DNA of 8,384 bases from positions 1 through 8,384 of the forward strand of contig NW_021828401.1 in NCBI RefSeq assembly GCF_006345805.1, given 5' to 3'. The position numbers were made by a program, and so were the translations under genes. The number at the start of each line of letters is the position of its first letter. Position 1 is the stretch's first letter. The DNA is from Octopus sinensis. Taxonomy: Eukaryota. This document shows positions 1 to 8,384 of this stretch, in pieces. The notes beneath the pieces were generated by a model. It was not told the DNA's origin, searched no databases, and worked only from the letters and a program-made list of their open reading frames with translations.

Positions 1-1047
1 TAAACCTTTATAAGGTCCTTGGTTTGTAAAACTGTATACGGTAAGGTCCTTTATTATTATTGTATATATAACATAATGCAAACGTGTAGCTTTTTTGTGC
101 CTTTTGTTTGCAGAAAATAAAGAAATAACAGTAATAACGTTTAATAAAGATTTTTAGGGGGCTGTACCTCTGAAAAACCTAAACCTTTATAAGGTCCTTG
201 GTTTGTAAAACTGTATACGGTAAGGTCCTTTATTATTATTGTATATATAACAACTAATGCAAACGTTTAGCTTTTTTGTGCATTTTTTGCAGAAAATAAA
301 GAAATAACAGTAATAACGTTTAATAAAGATTTTTAGGGGCTGTACCTCTGAAAAACCTAAACCTTTATAACGTCCTTGGTTTGTAAAACTGTATACGGTA
401 AGGTCCTTTATTATTATTGTATATATAACATAATGCAAACGTGTAGCTTTTTTGTGCCTTTTGTTTGCAGAAAATAAAGAAATAACAGTAATAACGTTTA
501 ATAAAGATTTTTAGGGGGCTGTACCTCTGAAAAACCTAAACCTTTATAAGGTCCTTGGTTTGTAAAACTGTATACGGTAAGGTCCTTTATTATTATTGTA
601 TATATAACATAATGCAAACGTTTAGCTTTTTTGTGCATTTTGTTTGCAGAAAATAAAGAAATAACAGTAATAACGTTTAATAAAGATTTTTAGGGGCTGT
701 ACCTCTGAAAAACCTAAACCTTTATAACGTCCTTGGTTTGTAAAACTGTATACGGTAACGTCCTTTATTATTATTGTATATATAACATAATGCAAACGTG
801 TAGCTTTTTTGTGAATTTTGTTTGCAGAAAATAAAGAAATAACAGTAATAACGTTTAATAAAGATTTTTAGGGGGCTGTACCTCTGAAAAACCTAAACCT
901 TGTGTATAATACGCACCCCTTCTCTAACTTGAGTCAAGGAGGTCTATATAACGTCCTTGGTTTGTAAAACTGTATACGGTAACGTCCTTTATTATTATTG
1001 TATATACAGCATAATGCAAACGTGTAGCTTTTTTGTGCATTTTGTTC
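1..1047. repeat. Tandem array of a 179/178-bp AT-rich unit (5 full units plus a deviant sixth partial unit; open at the left edge)
   Basis: TAAACCTT unit starts at 1, 180, 358, 537, 715 and 894 (spacings 179, 178, 179, 178, 179). Units are near-identical. The sixth has 45 extra bp (902-946), and homology stops after TTTTGTT at about 1046. Confidence 0.97.
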
Positions 1048-1480: not shown

Positions 1481-1583
1481 CTAACCTTAACCCTAATCTT
1501 ACCCCTAAACCCTAATCCTGACCCAAACCCTAATCCTAGCTTTAAACTTAAGTCCTAATCCTACCCCCTGATCCAGATCCGAT
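1481..1583 (+). repeat. Degenerate (CCCTAA)n telomere-like hexamer tract
   Basis: ctaacc ttaacc ctaatc ttaccc ctaaac cctaat cctgac ccaaac cctaat cctagc...: about 15 degenerate ~6-bp units with exact CCCTAA at several places. Confidence 0.7.
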
Positions 1584-1763: not shown

Positions 1764-2165
1764 GGCGCAGGAGTGGCTGTGTGGTAAGTAGCTTGTTTAC
1801 CAACCACATGGTCCTGGGTTCAGTCCCACTGCGTGGCACCTTGGGCAAGTGTCTTCTACTCTAGCCTCGGGCCGACCAAAGCCTTGTGAGTGGAGTTGGT
1901 AGACGGAAACTGAAAGAAGCCCGTCGTATATATGTATATATATATATGTGTGTGTTTGTGTGAGTGTGTTTGTCCCCCTAGCATTGCTTGACAACCGACG
2001 CTGGTGTGTTTATGTTCCCGTTACTTAGCGATTCGGCAAAAGAGACCGATAGAATAAGTACTGGGCTTACAAAAGAATAAGTCCCTGGGTCGAGTTGCTC
2101 GATTAAAGGCGGTGCTCCAGCATGGCCGCAGTCAAATGACTGAAACACGTAAAAGAGTAAAAGAG
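1764..2165 (+). mobile_element. Full-length tRNA-derived SINE with CORE-like domain (Octopus OR-type SINE-like)
   Basis: Pol III A box TGGCTGTGTGG (1774-1784) and B box GGTTCAGTCCC (1817-1827). ACCTTGGGCAAGT (1838-1850) matches the MIR/CORE consensus. Internal (TA)/(TG) microsatellite at about 1926-1973. 3' stem-loop CAGTC-AAAT-GACTG (2129-2142) and tail GTAAAAGA x2 (2149-2164). A second copy lies at 6530-6668. No TSD found. Confidence 0.9.
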
Positions 2166-2690: not shown

Positions 2691-2989
2691 GCATTTGTGT
2701 GCGCAAGTACATCAGCTGTTGCGATCGATACTACACGTACGCAAGAAAAATGCACATGCAGTTTGTGCTGGCTGGCATGAAATAATGCCACAAAATGCAG
2801 TATATTTAAGAGACCAAAAATGTAAGATGCAAAAGAGATATTTTCTTAAAACTTGGCATGAAGGAAGGAAAGACTATTTCGTTTCTTAGGTCCCTAGGTT
2901 GTTGAAAGATTAAATATAAGATAAAACATATAACGATGATTAAGTAATGTGCAAAATAATAAATAAAACGTATATATTTGGTAGAATAA

Positions 2990-3165
2990 TGTGTATATAC
3001 ATGTATATATAAATATATATATATATATGTGTGTGTGTGTGTATGTATGTATGCATGTATATATATGTATATATATATATGTGTGTGTGTGTATATATAT
3101 ATGTCTATGTGTATGTATATATGTATGTATATATTTAAATTATATATATATACATGTATATATAA
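2990..3165. repeat. Compound (TA)/(TG)/(TATG) microsatellite
   Basis: Read directly; abuts the outer end of the left palindrome arm. Confidence 0.95.
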
Positions 3166-4513
3166 ATATAAGAAAAAGGGACAGGCAAAACAGGTTGCTT
3201 GACCGCATACCGAAAAAATAGAAATAGCAGTCAAGAATGCTTATTTCTATCAAAGTTGGACTCCGGGCATGACAGACCCTGTAATTCACATATGCAAAAC
3301 AGAAGGAATAGATAACGAATACGAAGTCTGGCGGTTATCTGTGAACATCATGTTTCTGGATTATAAACATATTGAATATATATTCCATATATTTTTTTGA
3401 AATATATTTCATATATATTGCATATATATTTCACATCCTTCTTCAGCACAGCTTTCCATTGAAAAAGATTTATCATAGATTTATCAAATGCTACGTACCT
3501 CAAACCTTCTGACCATGCGACATCAAAATATTTGAAGAGAGTGACAAAGGCTAAATCTACATAGACGTTTGAATTCATAAATCCTCCCTCCAAAAATTCT
3601 GCCATGCGCATTACAAAATAGGTTGTCAAAGGAAGTGAAATCTCCAAATAGTAATATAAAGATAAGAGTAATAATTTCTATAAAGGCTTTTAAAAAAACC
3701 CCAATTATTTACTGGTAGAATTCGGTATGTAAATATAGCCGATTACCGGCAGGAACTTCTGTAAAGTTCAGTATATATATTGTATATAAGAAAAAGGGAC
3801 AGGCAAAACAGTTGCTTGACCGCATTCTTGACTGCTATTTCTATTTTTTCGGTATGCGGTCAAGCAACCTGTTTTGCCTGTCCCTTTTTCTTATATACAA
3901 TATATATACTGAACTTTACAGAAGTTCCTGCCGGTAATCGGCTATATTTACATACCGAATTCTACCAGTAAATAATTGGGGTTTTTTTAAAAGCCTTTAT
4001 AGAAATTATTTACTCTTATCTTTATATTACTATTTGGATTTTTCACTCCCTTTGACAACCTATTTTTGTAATGCGCATGGCAGAATTTTTGGAGGGAGGA
4101 TTTATGAATTCAAACGTCTATGTAGATTTAGCCTTTGCCCACTCTCTTCAAATATTTTGATGTCGCATGGTCAGAAGGTTTGAGGTACGTAGCATTTGAT
4201 AAATCTATGATAAATCTTTTTCAATGGAAAGCTGTGCTGAAGAGGATGTGAAATATATATGCAATATATATGAAATATATTTCAAAATATATATGGAATA
4301 TATATTCAATATGTTTATAATCAGAAACATGATTTCACAGATAACCGCCAGACTTCGTATTCGTTATCTATTCCTTCTGTTTTGCATATGTGAATTACAG
4401 GGTCTGTCATGCCCGGAGTCCAACTTTGATAGAAATAAGCATTCTTGACTGCTATTTCTATTTTTTCGGTATGCGGTCAAGCAACCTGTTTTGCCTGTCC
4501 CTTTTTCTTATAT
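3166..4513. repeat. Long inverted repeat: arms 3166-3825 and 3854-4513 (660 bp each), 28-bp spacer 3826-3853
   Basis: Line-by-line reverse complement of the left arm matches the right arm with about 13 differences (about 8 single-base indels and 5 substitutions; about 98% identity). Confidence 0.97.
3348..3647 (-). pseudogene. Possible decayed non-LTR retrotransposon reverse-transcriptase fragment (frameshifted duplicate at about 4033-4330, +)
   Basis: The ORF reads TTYFVMRMAEFLEGGF...AFVTLFKYFDVAWSEGLRY...FQW. By eye this aligns in order and spacing with the Jockey/I-type RT stretch STTxQLLRxxExIxxGF...AxFxDxxKAFDxVWHxGLxYKL...W. An FGF reading lies just upstream across a frameshift in the right-arm copy (4033-4041). 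The conserved Asp is replaced by Thr. No HMM was run. Confidence 0.4.
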
Positions 4514-4636
4514 ACATATTATACTGAACTTTACAGAAGTTCCTGCCGGTAATCGGCTATATTTACATACCGAATCTACCAGTAAATAATTGGTTTTTTT
4601 TAAAAGCCTTTATATAAATTATTTACTCTTATCTTT
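3822..4636 (+). repeat. 617-bp tandem unit, about 1.3 copies on + (and about 1.07 copies inverted at 3166-3825)
   Basis: GCATTCTTGACTGC starts at 3822 and 4439 (period 617). The second copy stops at 4636, where a microsatellite begins. On the left arm GACCGCAT ends at 3208 and 3825 (period 617). Confidence 0.95.
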
Positions 4637-4667
4637 GTATATATAAATATGTGTTTATATATGTATG

Positions 4668-4726
<59 letters not shown>

Positions 4727-4999
4727 GTATATATATATGTATGTATGTTTATGTGTGTGTATGTATGTGTGTGTATGTTTGTATGTATGTATGTATGTGT
4801 TTGTGTGTGTATGTATGCATGTATGTATATGTTTGTATGTATGTTTGTATTTATGTATGTATGCATGTATCTATTTACGTATGTATGTATTTATGTATGT
4901 ATGTATGTATGTATGCATGTATGTATGTATGTATGTATGTATGCATGTATGTATGTATGTATGTATGTATGTATGTATGTATGTATGTATGCATGTATG
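4637..4999. repeat. Compound (TA)n/(TATG)n microsatellite
   Basis: Read directly; explains the overlapping YI/CM-rich ORFs. Confidence 0.97.
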
Positions 5000-5162
5000 C
5001 GCTGTAAGAATACGAAGTTTCTGGAATAATATATATTCTACTTGAAAAGCACTGAGATGACCATGGCATCGAAATAAATTTTCGGATCTGAAAAAAAAAA
5101 TGAAGGAAAAAAATTTGACAAAATTTAACGCAGTTAATTCTGTGTTTCTCGATGGTTATATT

Positions 5163-5198
5163 TGTGTGTGTGTATGTGTTTGTGTGCGTGCATGTGTA

Positions 5199-5250
<52 letters not shown>

Positions 5251-5286
5251 TGTGTGTGAGTATGTTTGTGTGTGTGTGTGTGCGTG
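5163..5286. repeat. (TG)n microsatellite
   Basis: Read directly; lies just beyond the 3' end of the minus-strand RTE-like element. Confidence 0.95.
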
Positions 5287-5293
5287 GTGTTCT

Positions 5294-5450: not shown

Positions 5451-5998
5451 TTTATGTATGTATGTATGTATGTATGTATGTATGTATGTGTGTGTATGTT
5501 TGTATGTATGTATGTGTGTGTTTGTTGTGTGTGTGCGTGTGTGTATGTATGTATGTATGCATGTCCTGCTATTTTTTAAAATTATTATAAATCTTCCACT
5601 GAAGAGGGAGTCAGGTTTCCAACAAAGATACAAGGCTCCATCTTTGGGGTGTAGTTAACACAGACAAATTCACATTTGGAACTTGGAAAAGTCTTGCATA
5701 TCTTTACCGTTCCACTCACAGTTTTGCGCAGGACCTCGGCTAGATGTAAGAAAATCCTGGGTAACCCCATCGTCAGGACTCCTCTCTCGACCTTGCTGAC
5801 GTAGTCCAAAGGAGCGCAGAGAGCATTGCGTTTGGCACCAGCTTGGTTTGCAGGAGCTGCCGGAAGAGTATCGAGCGAACACGAAACCACCTACGGGCCT
5901 CCACTCTGGATTTCTTTGAAGGTTGTCTCTTTTCTGTAACCCTGGATAGGGGCCCATACTGGGTTCTGTCAGCCGGAGCCAGCTGAGCCCGCGTCCTG
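5294..5998 (-). mobile_element. Non-autonomous RTE-clade-derived retroposon (5'-UTR-like part 5587-5998 plus 3'-end-like part 5294-5340), interrupted
   Basis: The minus strand has ..ggcagctcctgcaaaccaagctggtgccaaacgcaatgctc..cctttggactacgtc..cccaggat.. and ends gcgaaactccattgtctcccgagacaaaaagatgccaataac. Both blocks resemble recalled BovB/AviRTE-related sequences (ctggtgccaaac..cctttggactac; ccattgtctctcgagacagacggatgccaacaac). The region is GC-richer than its flanks. The 5' boundary is approximate. Confidence 0.55.
5368..5564. repeat. Compound (TATG)/(TA)/(TG) microsatellite inside the RTE-like element
   Basis: Read directly. Confidence 0.95.
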
Positions 5999-6034: not shown

Positions 6035-6417
6035 GGAGGCGCAATGGCCCAGTGGTTAGGGCAGCGGACTCGTGGTCATAGGATCGCGGTTTCGATTCCC
6101 AGACCGGGTGTTGTGAGTGTTTATTGAGCGAAAACACCTAAAAGCTCCATGAGGCTCCGGCAGGGGATGGTGGTGATCCCTGCTGTACTCTTTCACCACA
6201 ACTTTCTCTCACTCTTACTTCCTGTTTCTGATGTACCTGTATTTCAAAGGGCCGGCCTTGTCACTCTCTGTGTCACGCTGAATATCCCCGAGAACTACGT
6301 TAAGGGTACACGTGTCTGTGGAGTGCTCAGCCACTTACACGTTAATTTCACGAGCAGGCTGTTCCGTTGATTCGGATCAACCGGAACCCTCGTCGTCGTA
6401 ACCGACGGAGTGCTTCC
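6035..6417 (+). mobile_element. Full-length tRNA-derived SINE, second family
   Basis: A box TGGCCCAGTGG (6045-6055) and B box-like GTTTCGATTCC (6089-6099). 3' hairpin GTTCC-GTTGAT-TCGG-ATCAAC-C-GGAAC (6361-6387). The end AACCGACGGAGTGCTTCC resembles recalled RTE-type tails. Possible 8-bp TSD ACTGTAAA at 6022-6029 and 6421-6428, with the left copy 5 nt off the A-box-proximal start. Confidence 0.85.
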
Positions 6418-6529: not shown

Positions 6530-6663
6530 TTACAAACCACATGGTTCCGGGTTCAGTCCTACTGCATGACACCTTGGACAAGTGTCTTCTACTATAAGCC
6601 CCGGCCGACCAAAACCATGTCAGTGGATTGGTAGACAGAAACTAAAACAAGCCCGTCGTATAC

Positions 6664-6668
<5 letters not shown>
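6530..6668 (+). mobile_element. Truncated copy of the CORE-type SINE (no A box, no 3' body)
   Basis: Aligns to 1797-1930 at roughly 85% by eye. Retains the B box (GGTTCAGTCC) and the CORE-like segment, then runs into (TA)23. Confidence 0.9.

Positions 6669-6714
<46 letters not shown>
6669..6714. repeat. (TA)23 microsatellite, left flank of the Penelope-like element
   Basis: Read directly. Confidence 0.97.
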
Positions 6715-6717
<3 letters not shown>

Positions 6718-6857
6718 GTAAAACGGTAAGATAACAAAAGAAAGAAAGAGACCTCAATATTATGTAAATAGAGGAAATTTATCTATAAAATAATATGTTA
6801 CATTACTCGATAGTCAGATAAAAACTCTGAGTTTCAGATGCCGAAAATTCAACAAAA

Positions 6858-6895
6858 CCTGTTACTCTGAGTGTCACGTCCCGTTCGTCGGACAG
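6858..6895 (-). ncRNA. Minimal type I hammerhead ribozyme-like motif (A14C variant, probably inactive)
   Basis: Minus strand CUGU-CCGACGA-AC GGGAC GU-GAC-AC UCAGA GU-A-ACAG. Helix I is CUGU/ACAG, helix II is 2 bp, helix III is palindromic (ACUC-A-GAGU), and the cleavage triplet is GUA. The core reads CCGACGA instead of CUGANGA and GAC instead of GAA. Confidence 0.55.
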
Positions 6896-6897
6896 TT

Positions 6898-6933
6898 TCC
6901 GACGAACAGGAACGTGAAACTCCGAGTAACAGG
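6898..6933 (+). ncRNA. Minimal type I hammerhead ribozyme-like motif (5' strand of helix I lost at the inversion junction)
   Basis: U-CCGACGA(6899-6905)-AC AGGAAC GU-GAA(6916-6918)-AC UCCGA GU-A(6928)-ACAGG. GAAA and GUA are intact and helix III is palindromic (ACUC-C-GAGU). Only 1 bp of helix I can form in cis. Confidence 0.55.
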
Positions 6934-7036
6934 TTTTTTGAATTTCTGGTGCTTTTAATAAAGCATATTACTCTACCCTGGTATTTGAGTACTCTTTTTT
7001 CCACCTTGTTTCACATTTATGTGTTTACTCTTACTC

Positions 7037-7038
<2 letters not shown>

Positions 7039-7070
<32 letters not shown>

Positions 7071-7113
7071 GTGTGTGTGTGTGGTGTGTGGTGTGTGTGT
7101 TGTGTGTGTGTGT
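7039..7113. repeat. (TA)14 followed by imperfect (TG)n
   Basis: Read directly. The TA-then-TG order is the same as the internal microsatellite of the intact SINE at 1926-1973. Confidence 0.95.
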
Positions 7114-7193: not shown

Positions 7194-7196
7194 CAC

Positions 7197-7254
<58 letters not shown>

Positions 7255-7291
7255 ACATATACACACAAACGCGCGCGCGCACACACACACA
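7194..7291. repeat. (CA)n microsatellite with embedded (GC)5
   Basis: Read directly. Confidence 0.95.
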
Positions 7292-7509: not shown

Positions 7510-8384
7510 CTAGCACCATAACCCGGCGTTGCCAGGTCATAATGCTAGTGCATGCATATACAGCTGTGTGCATGCGCACATACACGCGAGTACTGTCCAA
7601 AATCTCCGACCAATCACATACAGCTAGCTGGCATTCAATTGGCGTATCAAGTTTTGGGCATTTTGATCGGGTTTTGGATAGAAAATTCACAAAAAAGTCA
7701 CTTCTGTTGATTTTTTAATGGCTTTGCGGGGTGACTGGGGAAATGTAAAGATGTGCACGACCACCCTTGGACGGTTTTGAATGACCATAGAAAGTGCGAG
7801 CCCTCTAACTGAAAAATTGTGGGTTTGTATAAAGGACACACACCCACAACCGACAGACGACTTTGGCCATTTATAGAGTCATAGTGCTAGTGCATGAATA
7901 TACAGCTGCGTGCATGCACACATACACGCGAGTACTGTCCAAATCTCCGACCAATATACACTATACAGCTAGCTGGCATTCATTGGCGTAATCAAGTTTT
8001 GGGCATTTTGATCGGGTTTTGGATAGAAAATTCACAAAAAAGTCACTTCTTGTTGATTTTAATGGCTTTGCGGGGAGGGGTGGGGGGGGAGTGTAAAGAT
8101 GTGCACGACCACCCTTGGACGGTTTTGAATGACCATAGAAAGTGCGAGCCCCTCTAAACTGAATCGTGGGTTTGTATAAAGGACACACCACACACACACA
8201 CAACATTTTGCCGTTTATATATATTTAATGGCTTTGCTGGGTGACTTGGAAATGTAAAAATGTGCACGACCCACCCTTGGACGGTTTTAAATTAAAATGA
8301 CCATAGAAAGTGCGAGCCCTCTAACTGAAAAATTGTGGATTTGTATAAAGGACACACACACACACACATTTTGCCGTTTATATA
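7510..8384 (-). mobile_element. Head-to-tail multimer of a short non-autonomous Helitron (units 7510-7877, 7878-8223, 8224-8384+)
   Basis: Minus-strand 3' end: hairpin ACCTGGC-AAC-GCCGGGT (7537-7521), then 7 nt, then CTAG|T (7513-7509). Unit 1 5' end is TCTATAAA at 7877. Units 2 and 3 begin TATATAAACGGCAAAATG(TG)n. GTCATA.TGCTAGTGCATG recurs at 7536 and 7878; TTTAATGGCTTTGC recurs at 7714, 8058 and 8224. Confidence 0.8.

What the first reader, a model, noticed from the sequence alone, without database searches (positions are those of the whole stretch)
3166..4513. 1.35-kb near-perfect palindrome whose centre is defined by a 4-bp GCAT microhomology
Seen: 660-bp arms at about 98% identity with a 28-bp spacer. 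The intact versions of both junction sequences survive in the window: GACCGCAT|ACCGAAAA at 3201-3216 and AGAAATAA|GCATTCTTG at 4431-4447. The centre (GACC-GCAT-TCTTG, 3818-3830) is their fusion at the shared GCAT. In the native unit, GCAT and ATGC flank exactly those 28 nt. Established: this is the signature of short-inverted-repeat-primed fold-back or template switching. Such palindromes are normally unstable and would give long dsRNA if transcribed (an ADAR substrate in a lineage with heavy A-to-I editing, if the host call is right). The arms have different outer neighbours, which argues against a simple fold-back read chimera. The homopolymer-type indels do suggest consensus noise.
Basis: partly seen in the sequence, partly recalled or inferred. 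Interest (0 to 1): 0.7.

Follow-up and report, generated by a model that had tools for sequence, protein, structure and literature searches.

The report
Snap-back inverted duplication in repeat DNA
A 660-base stretch of non-coding repeat DNA has been copied backwards right next to itself by a DNA polymerase that folded back on a 4-base match, a well-known kind of copying accident with no sign of function, and whether it exists in the animal or only in the assembly cannot be settled without the raw reads.

Summary
Arms 3166-3825 and 3854-4513 are reverse complements (651 matches, 5 mismatches, 8 one-base indels). They are separated by a 28-nt spacer, and the centre joins at GCAT.

Each arm is longer than one period, which is why intact "native" junctions survive.

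The left arm is an inverted copy of 3854-4513, placed between a TA/TG microsatellite and the GCAT at 3822. It has microhomology at both ends: ATAT on the left and GCAT at the centre. A 4-bp inverted microhomology across a short spacer is rare by chance here (P = 0.008). This is the textbook signature of fold-back priming or template switching.

A plain fold-back read is unlikely, because the palindrome is short, internal and asymmetric. However, the arm differences are indel-type noise that the neighbouring satellite lacks, so read support may be thin.

No coding potential, homologue or other copy could be found, and no eukaryotic genome data were available. The host and the dsRNA/ADAR idea remain untested.

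Verdict: a real but ordinary structural variant is most likely (about 0.6) and an artefact is less likely (about 0.2). It is a new member of a known kind, of low to moderate interest.

The parts
2989..3165 (.). Left flank. A TA/TG microsatellite with a loose 52-nt period, G-rich on the + strand. It is not part of the palindrome.
   Evidence: TRF. Base counts G 28 / C 4. No similarity to the reverse complement of 4514-4636.
3156..3169 (+). GTATATATAAATAT, the left copy of a 14-mer that directly abuts both ends of the composite. It may be a target-site duplication. Its last 4 nt, ATAT (3166-3169), are shared with the end of the left arm and form the outer-junction microhomology.
   Evidence: Exact copies at 3003, 3156 and 4637 only. 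Chance of this geometry within these microsatellites is 0.006-0.023 for exact placement and 0.06-0.09 with +/-4 nt tolerance, so it is only suggestive.
3166..3825 (-). Left arm. An inverted copy of 3854-4513, spanning 1.07 repeat periods (unit positions 33-617 followed by 1-75).
   Evidence: (I1-I3).
3205..3240 (-). Reverse-complement copy of the intact native GCAT-28 nt-ATGC segment, carried inside the left arm.
3822..3825 (+). GCAT, the microhomology at the centre junction. It belongs both to the end of the left arm and to the start of the native right-hand sequence.
   Evidence: Inverted microhomology length is exactly 4.
3826..3853 (+). 28-nt single-copy spacer (the loop), in native orientation relative to the right arm.
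   Evidence: Identical to 4443-4470 (D18, 6).
3854..4513 (+). Right arm, the source copy. It is contiguous with the spacer exactly as in the native repeat.
3822..4438 (+). First full 617-bp period of the direct repeat on the right side.
   Evidence: the repeat finder D18 spacing of 617. Alignment. BLAST 4439-4640 against 3822-4027 at 96.6%.
4439..4636 (+). Second, partial period (198 nt) of the direct repeat. It differs from the first copy by 2 mismatches and 5 indels. Positions 4514-4636 lie outside the palindrome.
4430..4461 (+). Native hairpin ATAGAAATA...TATTTCTAT. The native GCAT (4439-4442) sits in the loop, next to the base of the 5' stem.
   Evidence: DNA fold -8.8 kcal/mol, z = -3.0.
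4637..5000 (.). Right flank. It opens with the second boundary copy of GTATATATAAATAT (4637-4650), followed by a (TA)n and (TATG)n microsatellite that is G-rich on the + strand.

Best explanation
The locus first held about 1.3 tandem periods of a non-coding 617-bp repeat (3822-4636) embedded in TA/TG microsatellite.

A DNA 3' end then formed at the left edge of this block, with the sequence ...GACCGCAT on the strand being made. This could have been a resected double-strand-break end or a nascent strand at a stalled fork. The end paired through its last 4 bases with the complementary ATGC/GCAT 28 nt away on the opposite strand. A polymerase then copied about 656 nt back along the repeat, crossing the 617|1 period boundary.

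The new end was joined to the microsatellite flank at a 4-nt ATAT microhomology (3166-3169). The result is an inverted duplicate lying head-to-head with its source, separated only by the 28-nt loop.

Shown: the anatomy, both junctions and their microhomologies, the order of events (direct repeat first, palindrome second), and the absence of coding capacity.

Inferred:
- The event happened in the organism's germline rather than in vitro.
- The arms are truly identical or nearly so, meaning the event is very young or the arms are homogenised by gene conversion.
- It has no function. At most, if it lies in a transcript, it would give a roughly 660-bp RNA hairpin.
For: - Arms 98% identical with a 28-nt spacer in native orientation.
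- The native GCAT-28-ATGC is present twice elsewhere in the structure.
- An inverted microhomology of 4 bp or more occurs at only 0.8% of random short spacers in this sequence.
- The left arm contains the 617|1 period junction, so it was copied from the already duplicated right side.
- The inner copies next to the centre match gap-free over 141 nt. The outer direct copy differs by 7 events in about 200 nt, so the direct repeat is older (I2, 16).
- The second junction also has microhomology, and no flank sequence appears to be lost.
- The palindrome is internal and asymmetric, and its flanks are same-strand microsatellite rather than mirror images. This does not fit a one-junction fold-back read, which is symmetric about the read midpoint (PMC12338684).
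- The architecture matches published in vivo events:
  - Human germline inverted duplications have a single-copy spacer and 2-8 bp of inverted microhomology, and 4-6 bp is enough in yeast (PMC3907307).
  - Fold-back-templated inverted insertions at breaks are made by Pol delta, with the other end captured by end joining (PMC11724301; PMC10622511).
  - Leading/lagging template switches occur at short interrupted inverted repeats (PMC10766183).
Against: - No read-level or independent-assembly evidence could be obtained.
- The arm differences are mostly one-base indels and homopolymer-boundary shifts. The satellite in the same window has none (P = 0.01). This points to a locally poor consensus and possibly very few supporting reads.
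- A near-perfect 660-bp palindrome with only a 28-nt spacer is expected to be unstable in vivo (established knowledge, reviewed in PMC7999016, which was listed but not read).
- Published fold-back insertions captured at both ends are tens of bases long, not 656. Large germline fold-backs have kb-scale spacers and extend to chromosome scale.
- IR plus spacer here is 36 bp, just under the 40-80 bp range favoured in the ODIRA data.
Confidence: 0.6

Rival explanations
1. Sequencing or assembly artefact. The animal has only flank + 3822-4636. The left arm was made in vitro by polymerase snap-back and template switching during library repair or whole-genome amplification, or it comes from a doubly chimeric long read. 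It then entered the consensus because few reads cover this microsatellite-bounded stretch.
For: - Fold-back reads make up 0.55-0.6% of ONT genomic reads and up to 20-30% in some libraries (PMC12338684).
- Amplification creates many artificial palindromes (Pacasus preprint 10.1101/173872, abstract).
- The arms differ only by noise-type changes, at a rate not seen in the adjacent satellite.
- In vitro polymerases use the same microhomology-primed chemistry, so the centre junction alone cannot separate the two cases.
Against: - It needs two chimeric junctions 660 nt apart in one molecule, one of them restoring the flank with no loss.
- Artefact fold-backs mirror the whole read, whereas here only 1.35 kb of at least 8.4 kb is palindromic.
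- There is no adapter or junk sequence at the centre.
- About 1% error per arm is better than raw CLR or R9 reads, which suggests more than one read contributed (inference).
Confidence: 0.22
2. Retroposition with cDNA snap-back. The whole composite 3170-4636 was inserted in one step by target-primed reverse transcription of an RNA of about 815 nt from the 617-bp repeat. On reaching the RNA 5' end (...ATGC-3' on the cDNA), the first-strand cDNA folded back on GCAT 28 nt upstream and copied itself for about 656 nt. It then attached to the upstream target end at ATAT. The 14-mer GTATATATAAATAT on both sides would be the target-site duplication.
For: - The same 14-mer directly abuts both ends of the composite.
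- 14-16 bp is the modal L1 target-site duplication length. Microhomology at the 5' junction and at the inversion junction is typical of 5'-inverted insertions (PMC2912911).
- cDNA libraries show 10-20% fold-back molecules, so self-priming of cDNA is common chemistry (PMC12338684).
- It would explain why the palindrome centre coincides with one end of the repeat block.
- Elements in this window end in TA/TG tails.
Against: - The 14-mer match is only marginally significant inside microsatellite (P = 0.006-0.09 depending on tolerance).
- There is no poly(A) or recognisable LINE/SINE 3' end at 4636.
- In the twin-priming model the inverted segment and the 3' segment are copied from different parts of one RNA, so a 656-nt duplicated arm is not what that model predicts (inference).
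- No other copy of the unit could be found to show that it is a mobile or transcribed family.
Confidence: 0.1
3. A mobile element with long inverted arms (Foldback-like or a long-TIR MITE), or a reintegrated rolling-circle product of a 617-bp circle. On this reading the palindrome is a family feature present at many loci, not a local accident.
For: - Both arms are longer than one 617-bp period, as rolling-circle or sub-repeat-built arms would be.
- The composite sits between matching 14-mers.
Against: - The inverted repeat does not reach the right end of the composite, since 123 nt extra lie on one side.
- The termini of the composite show no inverted repeat when read by eye.
- 14 bp is outside the target-site duplication range of cut-and-paste superfamilies (own knowledge).
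- The centre is a fusion of two points that are 28 nt apart in the native unit, which indicates a local copying event.
- No transposase or homologue was found.
Confidence: 0.05

Closest known systems
Fold-back (snap-back) inverted duplications primed at short inverted repeats. Examples are yeast and CHO palindromic amplification, human germline inv-dup with a disomic spacer (Hermetz et al. 2014, PMC3907307), and Pol-delta-dependent fold-back in yeast (PMC10622511).
   Same: Head-to-head inverted duplicate. A single-copy spacer equal to the fold-back loop. A few bp (here 4) of inverted microhomology at the spacer boundary.
   Different: Those events produce hairpin-capped or dicentric chromosomes and duplications of kb to Mb, with spacers of 0.8-70 kb in humans. 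Here the copy is only 656 nt, the spacer is 28 nt, and the far end was recaptured locally.
Fold-back-templated inverted insertions at double-strand breaks (Yu et al. 2024, PMC11724301), and Pol-theta-type snap-back templated insertions.
   Same: A microhomology-primed fold-back next to the break, synthesis, then capture of the other end by end joining. No loss of flanking sequence. Two junctions with microhomology.
   Different: Reported inserts are mostly 5-34 bp. This one is about 20 times longer, implying a processive polymerase.
ODIRA-type leading/lagging template switching at interrupted short inverted repeats (PMC10766183, PMC4689423).
   Same: A junction at a short interrupted inverted repeat, and a nascent strand that continues on the opposite template.
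   Different: ODIRA yields inverted triplications bounded by two such repeats around an origin, with preferred IR plus spacer of 40-80 bp. Here there is a duplication, one IR junction (36 bp), and one plain microhomology junction.
Fold-back artefact reads and amplification palindromes in long-read data (Breakinator, PMC12338684; Pacasus, 10.1101/173872).
   Same: A near-perfect palindrome, often with no adapter at the centre. Arm differences look like sequencing noise.
   Different: Artefact reads are mirror-symmetric over the whole read. Here the palindrome is short, internal and asymmetric, with unrelated flanks.
5'-inverted LINE insertions by twin priming.
   Same: A candidate 14-bp target-site duplication. 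Microhomology at the inversion junction and at the 5' junction.
   Different: Twin priming inverts without duplicating hundreds of bases. No LINE/SINE tail was recognised.

Membership tests
Fold-back / template-switch inverted duplication | The inverted copy lies directly adjacent to its source. | tested here: met
   3166-3825 against 3854-4513 at 98%.
Fold-back / template-switch inverted duplication | A single-copy spacer between the arms, contiguous with one arm as in the unrearranged sequence. | tested here: met
   3826-3853 is identical to 4443-4470 and in the same orientation as the right arm (D18, 6).
Fold-back / template-switch inverted duplication | Inverted microhomology at the spacer boundary beyond chance. 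| tested here: met
   4 bp observed. P(4 bp or more) = 0.008 over all 5-100-nt spacers in the native repeat.
Fold-back / template-switch inverted duplication | The junction is present in genomic DNA, meaning independent reads, doubled depth, or PCR/Southern evidence. | not testable with these tools
   No reads or eukaryotic assemblies are available. ORF look-ups across the centre found nothing on record.
Long-read fold-back artefact | The palindrome is symmetric about the read and runs to its ends. | tested here: not met
   The arms are 660 nt inside 8.4 kb. The left flank is unrelated to the reverse complement of the right continuation. The right side extends 123 nt further. This was tested on the assembled sequence, not on reads.
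Long-read fold-back artefact | Unsupported by other reads covering the site. | not testable with these tools
   No reads. Indirect hint only: an indel-type noise excess in the arms.
Foldback / long-TIR transposon | The inverted repeats form the two termini of the element and are flanked by a target-site duplication. | tested here: not met
   The matching 14-mers flank 3170-4636, but the inverted repeat ends at 4513, 123 nt short of the right end.
Foldback / long-TIR transposon | Multiple copies in the genome. | not testable with these tools
   No copy elsewhere in the window. The metagenome collection lacks even the window's SINE, so its silence carries no information.
Target-primed retroposition with 5' inversion | A target-site duplication of 7-20 bp flanking the whole insertion. 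| tested here: inconclusive
   A 14-mer lies at both ends, but chance within the microsatellite is 0.6-9%.
Target-primed retroposition with 5' inversion | A recognisable 3' tail or parent retroelement. | tested here: inconclusive
   No poly(A). The element is followed by (TA)n/(TATG)n like the SINE copies in the window. No parent family was found.
Hairpin-RNA locus / ADAR substrate | It is transcribed through both arms, with clustered A-to-G mismatches or small RNAs. | not testable with these tools
   No expression data. The RNA fold shows only that a transcript would form one long hairpin.

The most novel reading that the evidence does not exclude
The composite 3170-4636 may be a single retroposition event in which the first-strand cDNA self-primed (snap-back) at the RNA 5' end. 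That would insert a ready-made 1.35-kb palindrome flanked by a 14-bp target-site duplication. It would be a route by which retroelement machinery creates long hairpin-RNA or cruciform loci in one step, in a genome with many active LINE families. If the locus is also transcribed, it would be a newborn long-dsRNA source.
Probability: 0.1. Interest if true: 0.55.

Novelty: new member of a known kind. Interest (0 to 1): 0.3.

Why it matters
If real, this is a clean natural example in which ancestral and derived junctions sit side by side in one locus. It shows that a 4-bp inverted match 28 nt apart is enough to seed a 660-bp palindrome in an animal germline, and that the far end can be recaptured locally instead of producing a dicentric chromosome. 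Such young palindromes are potential fragile sites and, if transcribed, long-dsRNA sources.

If it is an artefact, it is a useful flag. It would show that a doubly chimeric molecule can survive into a published consensus in microsatellite-bounded DNA.

In either case it does not change any general picture. The mechanism is well documented and the sequence has no detectable function.

Tried and rejected
1. Independent copies or junction support.
- Exact-product look-ups of the 99-aa arm ORF and the 63-aa ORF spanning the centre found nothing on record.
- The word-indexed protein search with the arm ORF found no candidate.
- The exhaustive HMMER search with the 109-codon open frame found 0 hits in 1.84 billion representatives.
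- The metagenome scan for a 22-mer of the unit found 0. A control scan with the window's SINE core also found 0, so that collection holds no DNA of this host and its silence means nothing.

2. Host identification.
- ORF 5585-5890 had no homologue.
- Pfam gave nothing on seven ORFs.
- SINE strings do not occur in the paper library.
- The cephalopod/octopus call therefore rests only on my recollection of the SINE and on general features (36% GC, TA/TG-tailed SINEs, CCCTAA-like tract). It is unverified.

3. RNA families. Only sub-threshold miRNA models were found, lying on microsatellites and on the palindrome centre, and were judged spurious. ARAGORN found no tRNA.

4. Target-site duplication reading. 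The 14-mer looked striking against whole-window shuffles. It loses most of its significance against a microsatellite-specific null, so it was downgraded to suggestive.

5. Mis-join of two separate inverted copies. Rejected, because the two breakpoints are only 32 nt apart in unit coordinates and share microhomology, and the unit is not self-complementary, so no overlap could drive a mis-join.

6. Missed SMRTbell or ONT adapter at the centre. Rejected, because the spacer is native sequence found twice more in the locus.

7. Coding origin of the unit. The 109-codon open frame is mildly unusual (32 of 2000 shuffles) but has no relatives, so it was treated as chance.

Full report
**1. The observation**

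The window was read in full. A global alignment of 3166-3825 with the reverse complement of 3854-4513 gives 651 identities, 5 mismatches and 8 single-base gaps, which is 98%. The repeat finder gives gap-free inverted blocks of 186, 142 and 104 nt at 99-100%. Self-BLAST gives one inverted hit over 3156-4524. As a single strand the region folds into one continuous hairpin of -1119 kcal/mol.

The arms are separated by 28 nt (3826-3853), bounded by GCAT (3822-3825) and ATGC (3854-3857). The same GCAT-28 nt-ATGC is intact at 4439-4474, and in reverse complement at 3205-3240.

**2.

The right-hand side is not a single copy. Positions 3822-4438 and 4439-4636 are direct repeats with a 617-bp period (repeat finder D18; alignment; BLAST at 96.6% over 206 columns).

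Number the unit from the G of GCAT. The right side then reads 1-617 followed by 1-198. The left arm is the reverse complement of 33-617 followed by 1-75. Each arm is therefore longer than one period, and that is the only reason intact "native" junctions survive inside the arms.

The left arm contains the 617|1 period boundary, so it was copied from the already duplicated right side. The inner copies next to the centre match gap-free over 141 nt (I2). The outer direct copy differs from the inner one by 2 mismatches and 5 indels in about 200 nt. The direct repeat is therefore older than the palindrome.

**3. The two junctions**

*Centre.* The left arm ends ...TTGCTTGACCGCAT and continues TCTTGACTGC..., which is the native sequence after the GCAT at unit position 1. 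The overlap is exactly 4 bp. I enumerated every possible spacer of 5-100 nt in the native repeat. An inverted microhomology of 4 bp or more occurs at 0.8% of them. So the junction is microhomology-mediated rather than a blunt ligation.

The two breakpoints lie only 32 nt apart in unit coordinates, which fits a local snap-back or strand switch. However, one unit holds several hundred (overlapping) sites with 4 bp or more of inverted repeat. GCAT is a footprint of the mechanism, not a special signal.

The native GCAT sits in the loop of a modest native hairpin, next to the base of its 5' stem: ATAGAAATA...TATTTCTAT, -8.8 kcal/mol, z = -3. That hairpin could have helped stall a polymerase, but this is inference.

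*Outer left junction.* Homology to the right arm stops at 3166. The four bases 3166-3169 (ATAT) are shared with the end of the flank.

*Beyond the arms.* The right side runs on for 123 nt of repeat. The left flank is TA/TG microsatellite that matches the reverse complement of those 123 nt no better than shuffles do (68 of 123 against a mean of 73). Both flanks are G-rich on the + strand (28 G / 4 C and 74 G / 8 C), so they are not mirror images.

**4. A possible target-site duplication**

GTATATATAAATAT directly abuts both ends of the composite, at 3156-3169 and 4637-4650. A third copy lies at 3003. Against whole-window shuffles this is striking.

I also used a null that draws boundaries inside the window's own TA/TG tracts. 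There, a direct match of 14 nt or more in the right geometry occurs in 0.6-2.3% of pairs, and in 6-9% if 4 nt of slack is allowed. I treat this as suggestive only.

**5. What the repeat unit is**

It is AT-rich (33% GC) and non-coding.
- Pfam found nothing.
- The word-indexed search found no homologue.
- HMMER found nothing against 1.84 billion representatives for the 109-codon open frame of the left arm. That frame is only mildly unusual (32 of 2000 shuffles).
- There is no other copy in the window.
- A metagenome scan found none. A control scan with the window's own SINE core also found none, so that collection simply lacks this host.

The family status of the unit remains unknown.

**6. Real or artefact**

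*Against a simple artefact.* Fold-back artefact reads are mirror-symmetric about the read midpoint (PMC12338684). This palindrome is 1.35 kb inside at least 8.4 kb of unrelated sequence, with unequal sides. A second chimeric junction would be needed 660 nt away that restores the flank without loss. The spacer is native sequence, not an adapter. A mis-join of two separate inverted copies is excluded by the 32-nt breakpoint spacing and by the lack of any overlap that could drive it.

*For caution.* Eleven of the 13 arm differences lie in 3346-3642. Most are homopolymer-length or boundary changes. In contrast, 544 aligned nt of the 357-bp higher-order satellite in the same window show no one-base indel (Fisher P = 0.01). 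The consensus is therefore locally poor, as expected if few reads support it or if polishing skipped a duplicated stretch. Fold-back reads are 0.55-0.6% of ONT genomic reads and far more in some libraries. Amplified DNA is rich in artificial palindromes (10.1101/173872).

I put a real structure at about 0.6-0.7, summed over mechanisms, and an artefact at about 0.2.

**7. Mechanism**

The anatomy matches published in vivo events.
- Human germline inverted duplications carry a single-copy spacer and 2-8 bp of inverted microhomology, and 4-6 bp is enough in yeast (PMC3907307).
- Breaks near short inverted repeats give Pol-delta-dependent fold-back synthesis (PMC10622511).
- Fold-back-templated inverted insertions at breaks are completed by end-joining capture of the other end (PMC11724301).
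- Leading/lagging template switches use interrupted inverted repeats, preferentially 40-80 bp overall (PMC10766183). Here the total is 36 bp.

The present case differs in scale. It is about 656 nt, against the tens of bases of captured fold-back insertions, and it has a much shorter spacer than the human germline cases.

A less likely alternative is that the whole composite was inserted at once by target-primed reverse transcription, with cDNA self-priming. Points in its favour:
- The candidate duplication is 14 bp, and L1 target-site duplications peak at 14-16 bp.
- Microhomology is typical of the junctions of 5'-inverted insertions (PMC2912911).
- cDNA fold-back is common chemistry.

There is no recognisable retroelement tail, and the duplication is not statistically secure.

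**8. Host and downstream ideas**

No tool result identifies the organism. The cephalopod call rests on my memory of the SINE at 1797-1947 and 6530-6679 and on general composition.

Coleoid cephalopods do edit RNA extensively (PMC10278661, abstract). Octopus genomes are about two-thirds repeats with active LINE families (PMC13282606). Whether this locus is transcribed at all is unknown. The dsRNA/ADAR suggestion is therefore an untested consequence, not a finding.

**9. Verdict**

Existence in vivo, host and any RNA consequence remain open. This is a new example of a well-known kind of rearrangement in non-coding repeat DNA. Its interest lies mainly in being a clean specimen, or in being an assembly-quality flag.

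Noticed in passing
window 1-901 and 939-1046: A satellite array with a 179-bp unit organised in a 357-bp higher-order period. Alternate copies are 98-99% identical and show no one-base indels. A further partial copy follows a roughly 40-nt interruption.
   Followed up: partly
window 1481-1570: A degenerate CCCTAA-like (telomere-type) hexamer tract, interstitial, with about 67% matches to the hexamer.
   Followed up: no
window 1797-1947 and 6530-6679: Two copies of one SINE-like element (87% identity over 152 nt). Each ends in ...GCCCGTCGTATA and runs into a (TA)n/(TG)n tail. TA/TG microsatellites in this genome therefore often look like retroposon tails. This is relevant to the flanks of the palindrome.
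   Followed up: partly
window about 6040-6115: By eye, a tRNA-like head with A-box and B-box-like motifs (GGCCCAGTGG ... GGTTTCGATTCC). ARAGORN does not call it and Rfam tRNA does not match it, so it is probably a tRNA-derived SINE head.
   Followed up: partly
window 6845-6945: A second, much smaller hairpin. Its arms are about 46-48 nt and 87% complementary, with a short loop. The DNA fold is -42 kcal/mol with z = -11. It is older and more diverged than the main palindrome, and could be a MITE-like element or a hairpin-RNA candidate.
   Followed up: partly
window 7536-8384: A tandem repeat with a 345-bp period (90% identity, many indels) that continues as a 168-bp period to the end of the window.
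   Followed up: no
window 3351-3677, minus strand: A 109-codon stop-free frame in the left arm. It is broken by indels in the right arm. It is mildly unusual for this composition (32 of 2000 shuffles) but has no homologue in any protein resource searched.
   Followed up: yes
window 5163-5290 versus 7194-7291: (TG)n and (CA)n tracts 1.9 kb apart account for nearly all the other "inverted repeats" reported. This is trivial microsatellite complementarity.
   Followed up: no
window 7069-7112 and 5521-5545: Dinucleotide tracts interrupted by single-base slips (tggtg, tgttg). This is consistent with long-read consensus noise elsewhere in the window.
   Followed up: no
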